This document shows positions 201 through 18,050 of a stretch of 19,272 nt of DNA, one piece after another (positions within the stretch are counted from its first letter, which is position 1; each line of letters opens with the position of its first letter). Position numbers and translations under genes: made by a program. Origin of the DNA: Octopus sinensis (Eukaryota); the NCBI RefSeq assembly GCF_006345805.1, contig NW_021824272.1:1-19272 (forward strand), written 5' to 3'. The notes under the pieces are model-generated. The model was not told where the DNA came from and did no database searches. It was given only the letters and a program-made list of their open reading frames with translations.

Positions 201-637
201 TGCATGGGTGAAGCTGGTACTGGTGCTTCTTCTACTCTTCTTTTTCTTCTTCTTCCAATCAGGACTCACTAATTCGAGCCTACTCTAAGCTACTAAGAGT
301 GCGCGTGGCAACTTGAAGATCCACCCACCACGCGCGATAGACTGGCGGTTGCACGGGCACAAAAGCTACGTTGTTGTCTCCATTCCGTAAACGGTGGTTT
401 TTAACGGGTGGGGTGCTGAACCATCTTGGGGTACAGAGGATTCGCAATCTAGACTAGGGTCTGAAAGTTACCACACCATTGTGGGTTACATCATGGTTCC
501 TCTGCTTTGTGGCAGAAGTAGGAAGAAAGAGTGAGAGAACGTTGTGAAAGATTATAGCGGGGTTGTGGAAGAGTACAGTGGAGCTTAAGGTGTTTTTGCT
601 CAATAAACAGTAGTATTGCTCAATAAGCAGTAGTATT

Positions 638-908
638 GGTGGTGGTGGTGGTGGTAGTGGTGGTGGTGGTAGCAGTGGTATTGGTGGTGGTGGTGGTAGT
701 GGTGGTGGTGGTGGTGGTGGTGGTGGTGGTGGCAGTGGTATTGGTGGTGGTGGTGGTGGTGTAGCAGTGGTATTGGTGGTGGTGGTGGTGGTAGCAGTGG
801 TATTGGTGGTGGTGGTAGTGCTGGTGGTGGTGGTGGTGGTGGTGGTGGAAGTGGTGGTGGTGGAGGTGGTGGTGACGGAGCTGCTTTCCGTTGTTGTTGT
901 TGTTGCTG
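638..908. repeat. (GGT)n microsatellite with a higher-order unit, ending in (GTT)n
   Basis: ggt runs interrupted by gcagtggtattggt at 672, 732, 764 and 794. Explains the poly-T/P/H/V ORFs 454..939, 620..1033 and 767..955. Confidence 0.95.
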
Positions 909-1317
909 TTTCTGGTTGCATTGGTGACGAGGATAACAACGACGACAGTGTATAACCGCAGGTCAGACTTGATCCAGTCGACCACGATCAAAGATGCCAG
1001 AGTGTCCCTTCCTTTTCCCTGCACACAATACACTCGAACCTACATCATCTGACGTTAACGGATCATTTGAGGAAGCGTTCGACTGTTATTTCTAGCAGGT
1101 CGAATTACCAAGGTGAGCAGGGGTCTCCGAAGTGTGCTTCGCGGCACTTTAATGTGTCGCCAATAATCTTTATAGGAGACGTGCAATTAAGTCAAATGTG
1201 ATTAATTTTTGGAGAAGTATAATTAGGATTTTGTCATCTCTGTATGCAATCAGACACGTGACTGGTGACACGTGATTGATCTAATTGTTTATTTGATGGT
1301 TGGGCTGGTCTTGATCA

Positions 1318-1683
1318 TGGTGGTGGTGGTGGTGGTGGTAGTTTTGTAGAGGATGATGATAACGAAAACGAGGATGAGGAAGAAGTGGAAGAGGAGAAGG
1401 GGAGGAGGAGGAAGATGAGGTGGAGGAAGAGGAGGAGGAAGAAGAAGAAGAGAAGGAGGAGGAGGAGGAGGAGGAGGAAGAAGGAGAAGAAGGAGAAGAA
1501 GAAGAAGAAGAAGAAGAAGAAGAAGAGGAGGAGGAGGAGGAGTAAGATAGAGCTGGTGACTTCGACGACGACGATGATGATTGTGATGTTGGCGTTAATA
1601 AGAGTGAGGATGCTGCTAATGACGACGACGACGATGCTGATGACGATGATGATGATGATGATGATGATGACGATGATGATGAC

Positions 1684-1715
<32 letters not shown>

Positions 1716-1772
1716 CGATGATGATGATGATGATGATGATGACGATGATGATGATGATGATGATGATGATGT
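1318..1772. repeat. Compound triplet microsatellite (GGT)n-(GAG/AAG)n-(GAC/GAT)n
   Basis: Read directly. Explains the poly-S, poly-I and poly-M ORFs 1281..1793, 1315..1806 and 1385..1852. Confidence 0.95.
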
Positions 1773-2402
1773 TGACGGCGACAATAAAGTCAATGTTTAA
1801 CCCCAAAATCAGCCCCGGTGGATCAGATCAGGATCAAAGGTATGCAATTTGACACGTGATATTTATTTTTGCTTGCAACAACCGGTTCTTCTGGTCAAAC
1901 TATCGTATCTCCACCTGCTTCAGATGCCAAGATATCAAAAATTGTCAAAGTGTAGTGCAACAGTTTTGCTATGGAATGATGAAACTACTTTTTTCGTTTT
2001 CTGAAAGGAAAAAGAAAAGGCAACGTTTTGGACTTACGACACTTTTACATAATACCAACGATATATTCTTGAGCAAATTTTTTAATGTTTAACAGACGTT
2101 TACACCTCACAGAGTTTGAATACCTCATGCAATTTGAACTATTAGCACCAAACTTTGAAATACATGTGGCGACTTGATAAGACCCTGCGCGGAATTTGAT
2201 CGTCAGAGATTTCGCATAATTTTTTCTCTTCTCACACAGGGAAGTCTTCGAATATTCTTGCATCAACGAATTTAGTATAGTTCTACACTCTAACTCGATT
2301 CTCTGGTCTGTCAACATGCGACTGCGACTAACGCTGTTGTTGTTGATGTTGTTGTTACGCTTTTTTTCCTATGCTTTTTGTACACTTTTTTTTCTATGGA
2401 AA

Positions 2403-4210: not shown

Positions 4211-4390
4211 AAACAGCTGTAAGCCAAATTTGCTATAATAATAGAAAGATATGTAATGACCATTATTTATACCTTGTCTTATATGTATACAAGTATAGAG
4301 ATTGCACAAATGTGTACGGATGTATGAAGTGTGCGTAGAACAGTTTGATGTATGAAGTGTTAGGGTGAGTGTTGCATGTATATATATATA

Positions 4391-4826
4391 TTCTTTTATG
4401 CTTTTCCTTGTTTCGGTCATGACTGTGGCGATGCTGGAGCACCGCCTTAAAGTGATTTTTAGTTGAACAAATCGACCCCAGGGCTTATTCTTTGTAAGCC
4501 TAGTACTTATTCTATCGGTCTCTTTTGCCGAACCGTTATGTTACGGGGACGTAAACACACCAACATCGGCTGTCAAGTGATGTCAAGCGAGGAGGACAAA
4601 CATAAACACAAAAGCACACATACATAAATACACACACACATACATATATATATACATATATACGACGGGCTTCTTTCAGTTTCCATCTACTAAATCCACT
4701 CACAAGACTTTGGTCAGCCCGAGGCTATAGTAGAAGACACTTGCCTAACGTACCACGCAGTGGGATTGTACCCGGAACTATGTGGCTGGTAAGCAAGCTT
4801 CATACACACAGCCACTCCTGCGCCTA
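4391..4826 (-). mobile_element. tRNA-derived SINE, family A, full-length copy (octopus OK/OR-like)
   Basis: Minus strand: tRNA-like head, degenerate B box GGTACAATCCC (4762-4772), internal CA/TA microsatellite (about 4600-4662), 3' body and tail. 4484-4535 matches 17724-17775 at 51/52 nt. Confidence 0.92.
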
Positions 4827-4874
4827 TTATATGTGTGTGTGTATTTATGTATGCATGGATGTAAGCATATACAC

Positions 4875-7899: not shown

Positions 7900-9722
7900 C
7901 TCGGAATAGGCAGTATAAATGCTCGTTGCCTGGAGTCACCGTGGAAGTAGTACCACCAGCTTCACAGACACAGGTCACCGGATATATATGTGGTGACATC
8001 AGCGAGAACAGAATTTCCAAGCCACGAACCTTCACGCCCGTTTTCGGGTGGATACGTGCCTGTGTTCTTACGGAAGGGTTTGGATCTCAAGATATGGACC
8101 GTCCTCTTGGACCCAGAAAGTAAGTTTTTGGTCCTGGAGGTGGCGAGTAACGATCGGAATGTATTCAGATTTGTAGCTGTCCACGCTCCGACGGGAGTGA
8201 GCGACCAGGTTTTGCTGAGACATCTGGAAATTTATGCGAATGCAAGGTTTGGAAAGCTGATATGTAGGTAGGGCTAGCTGATATGGAAAGTAAGTGCAAA
8301 ATCCATGCAAATCTACTCGCACGTTTCCAACCGCCTGAAAAGAGCCGACTAGATTTCCCAAATGTGCCAGTGTGGATATAGACTAACAGCATCAGGTCAT
8401 CCAGATAGTATTTAAAGTTTTCTGTAGCGCAGAAGATAGGATAGTATAAGCTGTGCTCAATTTAAAATCACCAGCTACACAGCCACACCGCAAATTTAGG
8501 TGCTGTAGTATCCAACTTAAATATACTGCATAAACAAGGAACCGGTCACTGGAAGCTGAACGCGTATTTCTTAGCATGCTCAAAGAGCAGATTAGAAAGT
8601 AGTTAAGCGGGACTTGAAAGAGTCAATCGTTAACAACAAGTTATGTTTCGTCCTGAAACGGGAGATCAGAATTTAAAAGATTTCGTAAGATTGCAACAAT
8701 TGAGGAAATTAGAATAGAGAGAGAGACTTAGTCAAAAATTTAGAAGAGGCTCTCAGAATATCCATTGCAATGGATGTGCTTGAGTTGAGATTGGTCCTGG
8801 ACAAATTCTTCAACGTGAAGCACGAAGGCTGCGCTATCGTAGACACGAGGGGACGAAAGTCCTCCGATGGTTTCGAATGGCAAAAGCGCAACGGGGCAAC
8901 GGAGCTACAATTCGGAAATATGTGGATCATGATGGACGCATGTAACTTGATTCCAAGTGGATGTGCGTGGCTTTTCAATAGTATTTCATTCGGTTGTTTG
9001 AGACGAATGGCAGGCCAAAACACAGGATGAATTTCAGTGCCTTTACACGACTAGCGGATGGGTTTCAGACGCTTTACATGACTAGCGGCAAGAGAGACGG
9101 AATGGTACGAGGAGCCCATAAAAGCTCAAGAAATACAGGAAGCGATGGTTGGCTGAGGTTGGGGCGGGAACAAATCGCTTAGTTTGTATTGTCTGCCCTA
9201 CGAGATTTAGTTTTGTATACCAGACTTGTTTGGGGACCTCTTGGCCGATAGCTACTGCCACTGCAAAACAACGCAAGAATTCTCAGTTCAACGAGTCGAG
9301 AAGCAGTGGAGCAACTGAAAAAGGACCCAAACAATGGGGATAATTTTGGCTCATAAATCTGATAAACGCAGATTTCATAATCTTGGGAATGTTGATGGCG
9401 CATGTTGTCGTCGCTCTTATTGGTGATTTTCAAACATCTCGAACAGATATAGCCACAGCCTCCATCTCATACGATACATCATAGATAGCATTGGTAAAGA
9501 ACCTGGCGTGGATGAAGTTCTGATCAATTTATATCAGTCAAAGGCTTTCGATGTAGTTGGCCATCAGTATTTAGCGGCTGTCCTCATGGCAGCCGGTTTT
9601 GGCCCTGTCTTCCGCGGTTGGACGGCCGCAATGTAGAGGGACACTAGACTCATACTTTCGCTCGGTTTATCGATGCTGCCCGTCACGTCTCTTCTGTATG
9701 TTCTGACTGTTGTGCCACTAGT
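7900..9722 (+). mobile_element. Decayed Tx1/L1-type non-LTR retrotransposon ORF2 (APE endonuclease, linker, N-terminal half of RT), 3' part missing
   Basis: Across frames: IGSINARCL (7905-7931, APE start NVRGL-like), FLRKGLDLKIWTVLLDPESKFLVLEV..FRFVAVHAPT (to 8193), GTGHWKLNAYFL (WKLN 8550-8561, L1/Tx1 linker hallmark), INLYQSKAFDVVGHQYLAAVLMAAGFGPVFRGW (QSKAFD 9535-9552), SLLYVLTVVPL (to 9720). Many true stop codons and indels. No YADD segment. Confidence 0.88.
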
Positions 9723-9816
9723 AAAACCAAAAACGTACGGGGAAACAAAAATCGTACGGCGGAAACAAAAAACATATACATACATACATTCATACATACA
9801 GACAGACAGACATATT

Positions 9817-9954
9817 CGACGGGTTTCTTTCAGTTTCCACCAACAAAATCCACTCATAGGGCTTTGGTCGGCCCGAGGCTATGACAGAAGACACTTGCCC
9901 AAGGTGTCACACAGCGGGACTGAATCGGAACTATGCGGCTGGGAAGCTACTTAC
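9817..9954 (-). mobile_element. tRNA-derived SINE, family A, partial diverged copy (head and core only)
   Basis: cgacgggtttctttcagtttcc..aaatccactca..ggctttggtcggcccgaggctat..agaagacacttgcccaaggtg..gggactgaa matches the copies at 4663-4826 and 17886-18050. A box and 3' body are not recognisable. Confidence 0.88.
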
Positions 9955-10474: not shown

Positions 10475-10888
10475 ATGACGATGAAGATGGTGGGGTGGGG
10501 TTCATAGTGGTGGGAAGGGATGATGATAATGATGATCATTATCATCATCATCATCATCATGGTGAAATTGTAATCTACACCATTCTTGCTATTAACCGCC
10601 ACGTTCTCTTTCTCTTCTTCCCCTTCTTCATCATCATCATCATCACCACCACCACCACCATCATCATCAGCATCATCATCATCACCACTACCACCACCAA
10701 CACCACTATCACAATCATCACCATCATAATCATCATCATCACCACCATTATCATCATAATCATCATCATCATCAACATCATCATCATCATCACTACCACT
10801 ACCACCTCCACCACCATCATCACATCACCATCACCATCATCAACATCATCATCACCAACACTACCACTACCACCACCACCACTACCAC

Positions 10889-10923
<35 letters not shown>

Positions 10924-11525
10924 CCAGTATCATCATCACCATCATCACCATCATCATCCCCAGTATCATCATCACCATCATCACCATCATCATCACCATC
11001 ATCATCACCATCATCACCATCATCATCACCATCATCATCATGATTATCGTGATCGCCGCCGTCGTCGTCACTATCGTTATATAATCAACTCAATAATCGT
11101 CATCGTCACCGTTTTTGTTGTTGTTGTTGTCAGTATAGGTTATATAATTCTCAACATCATCAGCATCTTCCCTATCGCTGCCATTATCCTCCTCTTCCAC
11201 CTCCTCATCATCATCATTGTCGACGGCGTCGTCGTCAACATCGCCACAACCGCCACCATCACCACCATCATCAGCATCATCACCACCATCATCAATGTCG
11301 TCGTCGTCATCATCATCATCACCACCACTACCACCACCACCAACACCACCACAACCACCATCATCATCCGCTTCGTTATTGCCATGTTTTATTAATAATA
11401 CGAAGTCTGCTTCCCTCCCTTATTCTCCCCAACACCTCATCAACACAACCGCCACCACTACCATCATCAATATCATTACCATCATCAACACCACCACCAC
11501 CTCTACGGCCATGACCACCACCGCA
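10475..11525. repeat. Large mosaic (CAT/CAC/CGT)n triplet repeat field
   Basis: About 1 kb of cat/cac/gtc triplets, including a 36-nt internal duplication (ccccagtatcatc at 10922 and 10958). Explains the ORFs between 10378 and 11567. Confidence 0.95.
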
Positions 11526-14112: not shown

Positions 14113-17100
14113 CCTTAAAAAAAATGTTTTAGCCCGAAGGCCGCGGCCATGCTGGGGCACCACCGCTGAATGAGCCACACTAGTTTGTGAATCCACCTCT
14201 GATACGTGGCACTTGATCAACAAGGGAGTTCGATGCTGCTGCCCGCATCCGCGTCTCCTGTCGTGAGGTAGGTTCATCTGGGACTTCCAACAAGAAGAGA
14301 TCCAGTTTAGTTTTAAAGAAACCCACATCCACACCATGTAAGTCTCTCAGGCATTTAGGAGGATGTTGAAAGCTGTGGTCCTCTGAAACCCAAGCTGTTG
14401 CAGTATCTGGACCTGTATTTTGATGGTGATGTTGGAATCCTTGGCACCACGCAGCGGCGCCCCGTTCTGCGGTTGGAGTAACTTGAATGCCAAAGTTTGG
14501 GATAAGACCCTCCAGGATTTTCCAGATGTATATTACTGCATATCTCTCCCGCCTCCGCTCCAGGGAGAAGAGGTTTAATACCTTCAGTCTTTCCCAGTAG
14601 CTGACATTTTGCATTGAGACGATTTTCTTGTGTAGCTTCTCTGAGTTGCTTCGAGTTCTGCTGTTTGTTTTATATTGTGTGGTGACCAAAAGTTGGGAGC
14701 AGTAGTCCAAGCGGCTGAGGACAAATGTTTTCCATAGGACCATCAGTGTCTCTTCTCTCTTGTTCTGAAAGTTCGGAGAATCCATCCAGCTAGCCGTCTG
14801 CATTTATCACCAGATTAGCAATATGCATTTGGAAAGATGCATCATTGCTCATGTCAATGCCCAGGTCACGCACTGATTTGACTCAGGGATTGCAATTCTT
14901 CCTGGGCCAGTGTATCCAGTCTTCACGTCATTTACCTTGTGTGCCAGTAGCGCAGGGCCTGGAACTTACCTGCATTAAACTGCATGTTGTTGTCCTCAGC
15001 CCACCTGTATATTGTGTCCAGCTCATGTTGCAGATGCGCAATATTTTCAGGGTTCTGTATTGCGTGGGAGACCTTTGTGTCATCTGCATAGCTAGCAAGG
15101 GTGGTCATCGTAGCAACTGAAGGCATGTCTGAAAGGGCCACTATGAACATCAGTGGCCCCAAGACAGTGCCCTGTGGGACACCGCTTGTTATTTGCGTTT
15201 CCCTGGAGGTGGCTCCATTGCTCACAACTGCCTGTTTTCTGTCTTTTAGGAATTGTGCAGCCACTCCCAAGTTTCCCGCCTATGCCGAGACCACGCAGTT
15301 TGTGACAGATCATACCATGGTCGACTTTATCAAAGGCTTTTGCAAAGTCAAGATATATTACATCCACATTTGAGCCATTTAGTAGCTGTTTCAACACCCA
15401 GTCATAGTGCTGCAGGAGCTGTGTTAGGCAGCCTCTACCTGGTCGAAATCCATGCTGGGTGTCAGACAGTAAGTCATTTTCTTCAAGGAACATGATTAGT
15501 TTCTTACGGACTATTCGTTCCATGACTTTGCTGATGTGTGAGGTCAGAGAGATAGGCCTATAATTTTTAGCATCTGCTCTGCTACCTCCCTTATGGATAG
15601 GGCATATTACCCCCTCTTTCAGTTTGACTGGGAGCTTACCACTTGCAAGAAAGCTCTGAAAAAGAAGCTGTAGCGGTTTTGCAAGGCTCGTTTGCACGAT
15701 TTGAGAAGGATCGCTGGGAATCCATCAGGTCCAGCAGCTGAGTTTGTGTCATCTCATCAATGGCTAGTGTGATATCATCTTCTTCGATGTTGATGTACTC
15801 AATTTTTGTCTCTTTGGCCGCTGGTAAAGTGGCAAAGAATTCTTCTGGGTTGTTTACTTGCCTGTGTCCTAGAGGTGTAGTGAACACACTTTGGAACTGT
15901 TCGTTCAGTATTTCACTTATCCTCGTGGGATTTCCTGTGAGAGAGCCATCTTTTTGGAAGAGAGGTCCTATTCTCTGGTGCACTGTGGCTGTCTCTTTGG
16001 CAAACTTAAAGAAAGCTTTAGGGTTTGATTTTATATTTTCTATTATTACCCAAGCTTCTTATCTGCTCTCTCCTTTTCATGGGACTGATGTAGACTTTTC
16101 TCAGTTTCCATTAGCATTCTTTCGAGCCGAGACTTCTCACCACTTTGGTGCTTGCTCAGGCGGTTTGCAATCCTTGTCCGTCGTCTCATAAGAATCCTCC
16201 TTTCTCTAGGGATCCTGTTTTATTCTTGTGTGTGCTGGCCCTGCACATTGGGACATATTTGTCACATATGGCTTGTATTATGGACATGAAGTGTTTGTGT
16301 TTCATGTTTATGTCCGGTGTGGAGAGACATTCAGGCCAATCCTGTTTGAGGATCTCTTTCTCAATCGACTTCCAGTTGGCTTTATGAAAGTTTAAGTTGG
16401 AGAGATGGTGGGTGCTTCGTATAGGCTGTGTGTCTGCGGGGGCTTTTGTTCCATACATAGACAGCTCTATTATGTTGTGATCCGAGATCATTGTCGGCAT
16501 CACATTAACATTATGGATAATATCCATATTGTTTGTAAAGCAGAGATCCAGTATATTATCTGCCCTTGTTGGTTGCAGAAACTATTTGCTCCATGAAAGA
16601 GGTATTGTGAGATGGAGCAGGGACTCCACCTGTGCCTGCTGATGGTGTGTCATCCCTGGGAGCATCTGCCCCCCAGGCCATTCCACATGGGGAGGTTAAA
16701 GTCACCCATGAAGAATACACTGTGTGCTGTTCAAGGTTGGTGAGGACTTCTCCTATTTTTGTTAGGCAGTCTCAAAACATGCCTGAGTGTTTGGGGCGTC
16801 TGGTGGGCGATATGTAGTGCATATGACGATATTCAGTTGTCTTATGTGTACAATTTGAGTTCACATACTGAGTTTGAATATGACAGCAGGACCTGGGGGT
16901 GAGGTCATCTCGGATGTACATTGCAACTCCACCATGGCTCCTCCCTTTTCTATCTGTGCGTATGACTGCATATGCGGCATGTGTATTTCTGCATCACCTA
17001 TATCGGGTCAAGATGCGTTTGTGAGTGCCATGCATATAGCTTGATTGCATGTCACAAGGTCTCTCAGGAATGAAATTTTCTTTTTACAGTTTCCGCGCAG

Positions 17101-17622: not shown

Positions 17623-17846
17623 ACTCTCTTTTACTCTTTTACTCTTTTACTCTTACTTGTTTCAGTCATTTGACTGCGGCCATGCTGGAGCACCGCCTTT
17701 AGTCGAGCAAATCGACCCCGGGACTTATTCTTTGTAAGCCCAGTACTTATTCTATCGGTCTCTTTTGCCGAACCGCTAAGTGACGGGGACGTAAACACAC
17801 CAGCATCGGTTGTCAAGCAATGCTAGGGGGACAAACACACACACAT

Positions 17847-17877
<31 letters not shown>

Positions 17878-18050
17878 CATATATACGACAGGCTTCTTTC
17901 AGTTTCCGTCTACCAAATCCACTCACAAGGCATTGGTCGGCCCGGGGCTATAGCAGAAGACACTTGCCCAAGATGCCACGCAGTGGGACTGAACCCGGAG
18001 CCATGTGGTTGGTTAGCAAGCTACTTACCACACAGCCACTCCTGCGCCTA
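17623..18050 (-). mobile_element. tRNA-derived SINE, family A, best-preserved full-length copy
   Basis: Minus strand: A box TGGCTGTGTGG (18028-18038), B box GGTTCAGTCCC (17985-17995), CORE-like TCTTGGGCAAGTG, internal CA/TA microsatellite (about 17833-17885), 3' body, LINE-like hairpins (17658-17697), tail of AAAAGAGT repeats (17623-17654). Confidence 0.95.

What the first reader, a model, noticed from the sequence alone, without database searches (positions are those of the whole stretch)
14125..14164. SINE and CR1 LINE share a 3' end with covarying hairpins: a probable parasite-partner pair in one window
Minus-strand LINE 3' UTR (14125-14164) GGTGGTGCCCCAGCATGGCCGCGGCCTTCGGGCTAAAACA aligns without gaps to the SINE 3' end (17658-17697) GGCGGTGCTCCAGCATGGCCGCAGTCAAATGACTGAAACA at 30/40 nt. 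Four of the ten differences are the loop of hairpin 2. Hairpin 1, GUGC-[YCCA]-GCAU, is shared. Hairpin 2 is CGGCC-[UUCG]-GGCUA in the LINE and CAGUC-[AAAU]-GACUG in the SINE, with a compensatory C-G to U-A swap and a G.U to A-U swap. The SINE copy at 4408-4446 keeps the same tail with a shortened loop. It is established (for example eel UnaL2/UnaSINE1 and turtle CR1/PolIII SINE) that stringent LINE RTs recognise a 3' stem-loop that SINEs borrow. The inference is that this CR1 lineage, or a close relative, mobilises this abundant SINE, and that structure rather than loop sequence is recognised. I do not know whether this particular pairing has been reported.
Basis: partly seen in the sequence, partly recalled or inferred. 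Interest (0 to 1): 0.78.

Follow-up and report, generated by a model that had tools for sequence, protein, structure and literature searches.

The report
Octopus SINE borrows CR1-like LINE tail
The most abundant short repeat of octopus genomes ends in the same 40-base, two-hairpin tail as a CR1-like LINE next to it, so this LINE lineage very probably copies the SINE; the arrangement is textbook, but I found no published report of it for octopus.

Summary
The minus-strand stretches 14125-14164 and 17658-17697 match at 30 of 40 bases without gaps. No unrelated place in the window exceeds 21 of 40, and shuffled queries never exceed 25.

The 40 bases are a real LINE 3' end, not a stray SINE fragment. 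Five other LINE-type tails carry the same tail. Four sit at or just after the ORF2 stop, in relatives with about 70% nucleotide and 43-44% C-terminal protein identity. The fifth follows an RT fragment.

RNAalifold independently predicts two hairpins followed by AAAC and octamer repeats:
- Hairpin 1: GGY.GUGC[NCCA]GCAU.RCC.
- Hairpin 2: a 5-bp stem with a variable loop of 3-5 nt.

Across seven lineages, 83 of 84 pair cells are paired and three pairs show compensatory double changes.

The window's LINE copy is decayed and is not the best partner. A sister subfamily in Octopus sinensis (L140) matches the SINE at 36 of 40, shares its U-A pair in hairpin 2, and has a near-identical octamer repeat.

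The kind is well known: CR1 or L2 tails on SINEs, including in bivalves. I found no report of the octopus pair, and the latest O. vulgaris annotation leaves most SINE families unclassified. CR1 clade membership and actual mobilisation remain untested.

The parts
14125..14164 (-). 3' tail of the LINE. Hairpin 1 is at 14164-14145, hairpin 2 at 14143-14130, and the single-stranded AAACA at 14129-14125.
   Evidence: 30 of 40 to the SINE tail. The same tail is found in five other LINE-type copies. Fold. Covariance-model hit of 61 bits.
14113..14124 (-). Sequence after the LINE tail (TTTTTTTTAAGG on the element strand), then (AT)n. This is a degraded terminal repeat. Relatives carry octamer repeats at this position.
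   Evidence: Read directly. Octamers in L001 (TTAAAACA), L002 (AATAAAAG), L125 (AATTAAAG) and L140 (TAAGAGAG).
14180..17080 (-). Decayed, 5'-truncated ORF2 of a CR1-like LINE. The endonuclease remnant is at about 16500-16850, the RT at about 14932-15697, the C-terminal domain at 14183-14803, and the stop at 14180-14182.
   Evidence: ORF fragments in different frames. RVT_1 hits at E=8e-14 and 3.5e-11. Exo_endo_phos_2 at E=2e-5, below the gathering score. Similarity to O. sinensis and Argonauta copies starts at window position ~17080.
17658..17697 (-). 3' tail of the full SINE copy, identical to the SINE consensus tail. Hairpin 1 is at 17697-17678 and hairpin 2 at 17676-17663.
   Evidence: z = -3.2. 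Covariance-model hit of 70 bits.
17625..17657 (-). Terminal octamer repeats of the SINE, (TAAAAGAG)n.
   Evidence: Read directly. The same repeats follow most intact SINE tails in L137-L140.
17698..18048 (-). Head and body of the full SINE copy: a tRNA-like head with A- and B-box-like motifs, an internal (TA/TG)n stretch, and the 3' body.
   Evidence: Self-BLAST. A peptide from the body is 88% identical to an Octopus vulgaris 'hypothetical protein'. ARAGORN and Rfam find no tRNA.
4389..4832 (-). Second SINE copy, 82% identical to the first. Its tail is at 4407-4446, with hairpin 1 tightened and hairpin 2 destroyed.
   Evidence: 45 bits.
9772..9954 (-). Fragment of the SINE covering the 5' half only, with no tail.
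   Evidence: 78% identity over 188 nt.

Best explanation
The window comes from an Octopus genome. A CR1-like LINE lineage of octopods ends, at or just after its ORF2 stop, in a module of about 40 nt. The module has hairpin 1, GGY.GUGC[NCCA]GCAU.RCC, then hairpin 2 with a 5-bp stem and a loop of 3-5 nt, then AAAC and tandem octamers.

The abundant tRNA-like octopus SINE carries the same module as its last 40 nt, followed by the same kind of octamers.

By analogy with stringent LINEs (eel UnaL2/UnaSINE1, turtle CR1/Pol III SINE, amniote CR1), the LINE's ORF2 protein would bind this module on the RNA and prime reverse transcription on the octamer repeats at a nicked target. The SINE transcript, which carries the same module, would then be copied in trans.

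What is shown:
- The shared sequence.
- Its position at both 3' termini.
- Its conservation in six LINE-type tails.
- The conserved, covarying fold.

What is inferred:
- That the module is the RT recognition site.
- That this LINE lineage mobilises the SINE. The likeliest partner is an L140-like subfamily, not the decayed copy in the window.
For: 1. Match of 30 of 40 without gaps, far above the background maximum of 21-25.

2. The same tail sits at or just after the ORF2 stop in L001, L002 and L125 and across the ORF2 stop in L140. A further LINE-type tail lies about 60 nt downstream of an RT fragment in L139.

3. In relatives whose ORF2 3' part is only about 70% identical in nucleotides and 43-44% in protein, the tails are 79-83% identical. 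They lie after stop codons in different frames, so the conservation acts on the RNA or DNA and not on a protein.

4. RNAalifold predicts the two hairpins without guidance. Across seven lineages, 83 of 84 cells pair and three pairs show double changes: G-C/A-U, C-G/U.G/U-A and C-G/U-A. None of 500 shuffles reaches the observed paired fraction or covariation score. Slid controls give 18-45% pairing.

5. The SINE and L140 tails fold better than their shuffles, with z = -3.2 and -3.3.

6. L140 matches the SINE at 36 of 40, shares the U-A pair of hairpin 2, and has the octamer TAAGAGAG against the SINE's TAAAAGAG.

7. The covariance model finds 21 SINE-type and 3 LINE-type tails in 83.7 kb of Octopus DNA.

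8. A 3' hairpin followed by an octamer microsatellite is the described recognition structure of CR1 (PMC8665684, PMC4316615). CR1-tailed SINEs with stem-loops and compensatory changes are described in bivalves (PMC4824008, PMC4758252, PMC11481361).
Against: There is no functional evidence.

The window LINE's own tail is no more stable than its shuffles (z = -0.18), and one of its pairs is broken.

The covariation rests on few independent events, spread over seven lineages and three pairs.

The direction of transfer is not proven. An L140-type LINE could have taken its tail from the SINE by template switching.

Only about 84 kb of Octopus DNA and a handful of LINE copies were available. Other octopus LINE classes (RTE, Dong-R4, L1-Tx1) were not screened for better matches.

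All LINE copies seen are decayed, so no active partner was identified.

One relative (L003/L004) lacks the tail. More distant relatives (L126, L128) have different 3' UTRs.
Confidence: 0.85

Rival explanations
1. The 40 nt at the end of the window's LINE is a severely 5'-truncated SINE copy, or a SINE-derived patch, that happens to abut a tail-less LINE. It would then not be part of the LINE.
For: The matching stretch is short at 40 nt. The window LINE is decayed. One relative (L003/L004) has no such tail after its ORF2.
Against: Four other LINE copies from diverged subfamilies and at least two host lineages (Octopus sinensis and an argonaut-like source) carry the tail at or across the ORF2 stop, with no SINE body between. 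A fifth LINE-type tail follows an RT fragment in L139. Five of the six LINE-type tails share a C-G pair in hairpin 2 that none of the SINE tails aligned here has. In L140 the ORF2 reads into the tail.
Confidence: 0.03
2. The tail is shared, but it moved from the SINE into one or more LINE subfamilies, or both took it from a third element. The present similarity would then say little about which LINE mobilised the SINE burst.
For: Tail exchange by template switching is documented for SINEs and LINEs (PMC5786205, PMC11481361). The SINE-type hairpin 2 occurs in only one LINE copy seen here, L140. Authors of bivalve studies warn that a sibling LINE may be mistaken for the true partner (PMC11481361).
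Against: The tail is found across LINE subfamilies that differ by about 30% in ORF2 nucleotides, including an argonaut-like one, so it is old in the LINE lineage. The SINE tail nests inside LINE tail diversity, closest to L140. Whatever the direction, sharing the module implies use of the same RT.
Confidence: 0.1
3. The similarity is real, but the module has another role in both elements, such as transcript 3'-end stability or processing. The SINE would then be mobilised by a different octopus LINE, for example RTE or Dong-R4.
For: RTE and Dong-R4 are the most abundant LINE classes in O. vulgaris, and an RTE is the only full-length LINE reported as expressed in octopus brain (PMC9115989). No assay links this module to an RT.
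Against: In the intact copies the SINE ends in the same module followed by the same kind of octamer repeats as these LINEs. It has no poly(A) and no RTE-type tail. This is the arrangement shown experimentally to be required for stringent LINEs in other animals (PMC3747384).
Confidence: 0.05

Closest known systems
Bivalve SINEs with CR1 or CR1-Zenon tails: BivaV-SINE2, BivaCORE-SINE1 and Vhc_1 with CR1-14_CGi and CR1-1_CGi (PMC4824008, PMC4758252, PMC11481361)
   Same: A mollusc tRNA-derived SINE shares only its last few tens of bases with the 3' end of a CR1-type LINE. Reported homologies are 35-61 bp at 72-95% identity. They form conserved stem-loops with compensatory changes.
   Different: The host class is different (cephalopod). 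I could not compare the actual tail sequences because the figures and supplements are not held, so I do not know whether this is the same tail motif. The octopus SINE makes up a far larger share of its genome.
Amniote CR1 3' UTR: hairpin plus (ATTCTRTG)n octamer microsatellite, and the turtle CR1 / Pol III SINE pair (PMC8665684, PMC4316615, PMC3747384)
   Same: There is no poly(A). A hairpin sits immediately upstream of tandem 8-nt repeats at the very 3' end, and a SINE borrows the tail.
   Different: Here there are two hairpins. The octamers have a different sequence (TAAAAGAG, TAAGAGAG, AATAAAAG, TTAAAACA). The 3' UTR is almost absent, and in L140 the ORF2 stop lies inside hairpin 2.
Eel UnaL2 / UnaSINE1 (L2 clade), the experimentally tested stringent pair (cited in PMC3747384)
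   Same: This is the model for the mechanism: the RT recognises a conserved 3' stem-loop, repeats at the end serve for priming, and the SINE is mobilised in trans through the shared tail.
   Different: The LINE clade and the sequence are different. Nothing has been tested for the octopus elements.

Membership tests
Stringent-type SINE/LINE pair with a common 3' tail | The SINE 3' end is homologous to the LINE 3' end, above chance. | tested here: met
   30 of 40 for the window LINE and 33-36 of 40 for relatives. Background maximum is 21-25.
Stringent-type SINE/LINE pair with a common 3' tail | The homology lies at the extreme 3' terminus of both elements, just before the terminal repeats. | tested here: met
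   The LINE tail starts 15 nt after the ORF2 stop and ends at the element end. The SINE tail is the last unique sequence before the octamers.
Stringent-type SINE/LINE pair with a common 3' tail | The tail belongs to the LINE family and is present in other copies and subfamilies. | tested here: met
   L001, L002, L125 and L140 carry it at or across the ORF2 stop, and L139 carries it after an RT fragment. L003/L004 do not carry it.
Stringent-type SINE/LINE pair with a common 3' tail | The tail forms a conserved secondary structure supported by compensatory changes. | tested here: met
   RNAalifold predicts two hairpins. 83 of 84 cells pair, three pairs show double changes, and 0 of 500 shuffles reach the observed values. 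The number of independent events is small.
Stringent-type SINE/LINE pair with a common 3' tail | The SINE has an RNA polymerase III head (tRNA, 5S or 7SL derived). | tested here: inconclusive
   A-box-like and B-box-like (GGTTCAGTCCC) motifs can be read in the head. ARAGORN and Rfam find no tRNA.
Stringent-type SINE/LINE pair with a common 3' tail | The LINE proteins mobilise the SINE in trans, and this depends on the tail. | not testable with these tools
   This needs a retrotransposition assay.
CR1 clade of non-LTR retrotransposons | ORF2 has an APE-type endonuclease and a reverse transcriptase. | tested here: met
   RVT_1 at E=8e-14 and 3.5e-11. Exo_endo_phos_2 at E=2e-5, below the gathering score in a frameshifted remnant.
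CR1 clade of non-LTR retrotransposons | The 3' end has a hairpin followed by an octamer microsatellite and no poly(A). | tested here: met
   8-nt repeats follow the hairpins in L001, L002, L125, L140, L139 and the SINE. The feature is defined in PMC8665684 and PMC4316615. The window copy's own repeats are degraded.
CR1 clade of non-LTR retrotransposons | The RT domain groups with CR1 in a phylogeny, as opposed to CR1-Zenon, L2, Rex1 or Jockey. | not tested
   No reference RT set was available. The only named non-cephalopod hit is 'RNA-directed DNA polymerase from transposon BS'. The O. vulgaris annotation lists CR1 but no L2 or Jockey class. Both are circumstantial.
CR1 clade of non-LTR retrotransposons | ORF1 of CR1 type lies upstream of ORF2. 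| not testable with these tools
   The window copy and L140 are 5'-truncated.

The most novel reading that the evidence does not exclude
A single CR1-like subfamily (L140-like) drove the octopus-specific SINE expansion, which fills roughly a tenth of the genome. It would have done so through a two-hairpin-plus-octamer module conserved across Octopoda. That module is so close to the coding end that in this subfamily the ORF2 stop codon lies inside the recognition hairpin. The pairing would be absent from current octopus repeat annotations, where most SINE families are 'unclassified'.
Probability: 0.45. Interest if true: 0.55.

Novelty: new member of a known kind. Interest (0 to 1): 0.4.

Why it matters
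SINEs are the largest repeat class in Octopus genomes. They cover about 11.7% of O. vulgaris, and 1279 of 1317 families are unclassified. They have been linked to octopus-specific genome expansion and to brain-expressed transcripts (PMC8967140, PMC9115989).

Naming the LINE lineage whose tail they carry gives a testable driver for that expansion. It also gives a rule for classifying the 'unclassified' SINEs: the tail module, which is searchable with a covariance model. And it gives a defined 40-nt RNA element for a retrotransposition assay.

For the general biology of SINE/LINE pairs it adds an example, not a new principle.

Tried and rejected
1. Exact-pattern scans of metagenome contigs, genome contigs and viral contigs for the tail gave only chance hits in GC-rich bacterial contigs, or nothing.

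2. ARAGORN and Rfam found no tRNA or other family in the window. The sub-threshold Rfam hits are microsatellite artefacts.

3. More distant LINE relatives (L126, L128, 36-37% protein identity) have unrelated 3' UTRs. L127 has a similar two-hairpin layout (GUAC[CCCA]GUAC), but its energy is no better than shuffles (z = -0.75), so I did not count it.

4. L003/L004, a Logan relative, lose similarity at window position 14237 and have no tail.

5. The repeat finder on the whole window was swamped by microsatellites.

6. I tried to compare the tail with the published bivalve CR1 tails and with SINEBase alignments. This failed because the supplements are not held. A search for the tail sequence in the paper library found nothing.

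7. I considered counting covariation over individual SINE copies. I rejected this as the main test because inserted copies decay neutrally, so the lineage-level alignment A4 was used instead.
Full report
**The observation**

The reverse complement of 14125-14164 is GGTGGTGCCCCAGCATGGCCGCGGCCTTCGGGCTAAAACA. The reverse complement of 17658-17697 is GGCGGTGCTCCAGCATGGCCGCAGTCAAATGACTGAAACA. They match at 30 of 40 bases without gaps.

I slid the SINE 40-mer over both strands of the window. The LINE tail is the best hit that is not a SINE, and unrelated places reach at most 21 of 40. For 300 shuffled queries the best match averaged 21.7 and never passed 25. The match is therefore not chance, and it is anchored at the 3' terminus of both elements.

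**What the two elements are**

On the minus strand, from about 17080 down to 14125, lies a decayed and 5'-truncated LINE ORF2.
- An endonuclease remnant gives Exo_endo_phos_2 at E=2e-5, which is below the gathering score.
- Two RT pieces give RVT_1 at E=8e-14 and 3.5e-11.
- A 207-aa C-terminal piece ends at the stop codon at 14180-14182.
- The tail begins 15 nt after that stop, so there is almost no other 3' UTR.

The SINE is a roughly 400-nt element on the minus strand at 17658-18048. It has a tRNA-like head with a B-box-like GGTTCAGTCCC, an internal (TA/TG)n stretch, a 3' body, the tail, and then (TAAAAGAG)n. The window holds a second copy at 4389-4832 and a 5' half at 9772-9954. ARAGORN and Rfam do not call a tRNA in the head.

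A peptide read from the SINE body is 88% identical to a 'hypothetical predicted protein' of Octopus vulgaris. The best named relatives of the LINE RT are from Argonauta hians and Octopus sinensis, at 74-78% identity. The window is therefore from an Octopus-type genome.

**Is the 40-nt segment really part of the LINE?**

Relatives of the C-terminal ORF are only 43-44% identical in protein, and about 70% in nucleotides over the ORF. The contigs that encode them carry the same tail at or just after the ORF2 stop:
- L001: GGTGGTGCACCAGCATGGCCACAGCCAACTCGGCTGAAACA, then (TTAAAACA)n.
- L002: GGCGGTGCTCCAGCATGGCCTCAGCCACTGGCTGAAACG, then (AATAAAAG)n.
- L125: GGTGGTGCTCCAGCATGACCACAGCCATATGGCTGAAACC, then (AATTAAAG)n.

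P0001, the protein of L001, is 94% identical to a LINE fragment in the Argonauta hians genome. L001 therefore probably comes from an argonaut-like source.

In an O. sinensis chromosome (L140), a LINE copy about 68% identical to the window LINE ends in GGCGGTGCTCCAGCATGGCCACAGTCATTTGACTGAAATA, then (TAAGAGAG)n. Its ORF2 reads into the tail, and the stop TGA lies in the 3' arm of hairpin 2.

A sixth LINE-type tail lies about 60 nt after an RT fragment in L139. That copy is probably internally deleted.

No SINE body lies between ORF2 and the tail in any of these. In four of them the tail sits after stop codons in different frames. The conservation is therefore on the nucleic acid, and the tail belongs to the LINE lineage. 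The tails are 79-83% identical where the neighbouring ORF is about 70%.

One relative (L003/L004) lacks the tail. More distant relatives (L126, L128) have other 3' UTRs.

**Structure**

RNAfold gives the same fold for all intact tails:
- Hairpin 1 is GGY.GUGC[NCCA]GCAU.RCC, with 3 + 4 bp around a G/G mismatch.
- Hairpin 2 follows after one base, with a 5-bp stem and a loop of 3-5 nt.
- Then comes single-stranded AAAC, followed by the octamers.

RNAalifold on 16 sequences predicts exactly this structure without guidance.

On a lineage-level alignment (six LINE-type tails plus the SINE consensus), 83 of 84 pair cells are standard pairs. Three pairs show changes on both sides:
- G-C to A-U in the outer stem of hairpin 1.
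- C-G, U.G and U-A in the outer stem of hairpin 1.
- C-G to U-A in hairpin 2.

None of 500 shuffles reaches the observed paired fraction or covariation score. Sliding the partners by 1-3 columns gives 18-45% pairing.

The number of independent events is small, so I read this as good but not overwhelming support.

The SINE and L140 tails fold better than their dinucleotide shuffles (z = -3.2 and -3.3). The window LINE tail does not (z = -0.18). It is GC-rich and has a broken C.A pair.

The loop of hairpin 2 differs in every lineage: UUCG, AACUC, ACU, AUAU, AUUU, ACAU, AAAU. Hairpin 1 and its NCCA loop are almost invariant. 'Structure, not loop sequence' is therefore supported for hairpin 2 only.

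**Which LINE is the partner?**

Identity of each LINE tail to the SINE consensus tail:

| LINE tail | Matches |
|---|---|
| Window LINE | 30 of 40 |
| L125 | 33 of 40 |
| L001 | 34 of 41 |
| L002 | 34 of 40 |
| L140 | 36 of 40 |

L140 alone shares the SINE's U-A pair in hairpin 2. Its octamer TAAGAGAG differs by one base from the SINE's TAAAAGAG.

It separates LINE subfamilies, and the SINE sides with one of them. The window copy is a decayed member of a sister subfamily. An L140-like subfamily is the more likely source of the RT and the more likely donor of the tail. The direction of transfer cannot be fixed with these data.

**Abundance**

A covariance model of the tail finds 21 SINE-type and 3 LINE-type tails in 83.7 kb of Octopus DNA (window, L137, L139, L140). 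That is about one SINE tail per 4 kb. It finds only one weak hit in 21 kb of Argonauta.

The tail is attached to several slightly different SINE bodies.

**Mechanism**

By analogy with stringent LINEs, the ORF2 protein would bind the two-hairpin module and prime reverse transcription on the octamer repeats. The SINE transcript would be copied in trans because it carries the same module.

The analogy rests on published work. The 3' UTR is required for retrotransposition, the eel UnaL2/UnaSINE1 experiments support it, and the hairpin plus octamer microsatellite is the proposed RT recognition site of CR1 (PMC3747384, PMC8665684, PMC4316615). For the octopus elements this is inference, and nothing here tests function.

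**Comparison with what is known**

The kind is textbook. In molluscs, bivalve SINEs share 35-61 bp at 72-95% identity with CR1 or CR1-Zenon 3' ends, with stem-loops and compensatory mutations (PMC4824008, PMC4758252, PMC11481361).

For octopus I found no report.
- Ohshima's 2013 table of SINE/LINE pairs has no octopus entry.
- The cephalopod repeat papers give the SINEs as tRNA-Core, tRNA-Deu or unclassified, with no partner.
- The 2026 O. vulgaris annotation lists 1279 of 1317 SINE families as unclassified. Its only LINE-tailed class is tRNA-CORE-RTE.
- I could not consult Repbase or Dfam notes.

**Clade**

The 3' architecture (hairpins plus octamers, no poly(A)) fits CR1. The O. vulgaris annotation has CR1 but no L2 or Jockey class. 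I did not run an RT phylogeny, so 'CR1-like' is as far as the evidence goes.

**Verdict**

This is a new member of a known kind. It is of moderate interest, because it names a probable driver for the largest repeat class of octopus genomes.

Noticed in passing
window 7900-9600 (+): A second, unrelated LINE-like remnant, with an endonuclease-like 'FRFVAVHAPTG' and an RT-like 'YQSKAFDVVGHQYL' motif in broken frames. It gave no Pfam hit at E<=0.01.
   Followed up: partly
window 450-1800 and 10500-11400: Long imperfect trinucleotide arrays (GGT/GAT-rich and ACC/ATC-rich) that are reverse complements of each other, about 9 kb apart. Arms are 70-75% complementary over about 200 nt.
   Followed up: no
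L140 13093-13132: In this O. sinensis LINE copy, ORF2 reads through the tail (...GGAPAWPQSFD*), and the stop codon TGA lies in the 3' arm of hairpin 2. Coding sequence and the presumed RT recognition element overlap.
   Followed up: partly
L140 2042-2147: Two SINE 3' ends lie head to head as an inverted pair, joined through their octamer tails.
   Followed up: no
L139 12400-12640: A LINE RT fragment is followed after about 60 nt by a LINE-type tail, with the roughly 1-kb C-terminal region missing. It may be an internally deleted, non-autonomous LINE derivative. Its hairpin 1 outer stem is rebuilt by compensatory changes.
   Followed up: partly
L127 1104-1150: A 36%-identical relative from a marine metagenome has a 3' UTR with a similar two-hairpin layout, GUAC[CCCA]GUAC then UGAC...GUCA, followed by (AATA)n. 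The fold is no better than shuffles.
   Followed up: partly
L003/L004 (Logan SRR11869391 and SRR11869385): This relative has a C-terminus 63% identical to the window LINE, but the similarity ends at window position 14237 and no tail follows.
   Followed up: no
L141 1693-1741: The only tail-model hit in 21 kb of Argonauta hians, at 17.9 bits. Hairpin 1 is kept (GGUGC[ACCA]GCAU) and hairpin 2 is degenerate. The element it belongs to is unknown.
   Followed up: no
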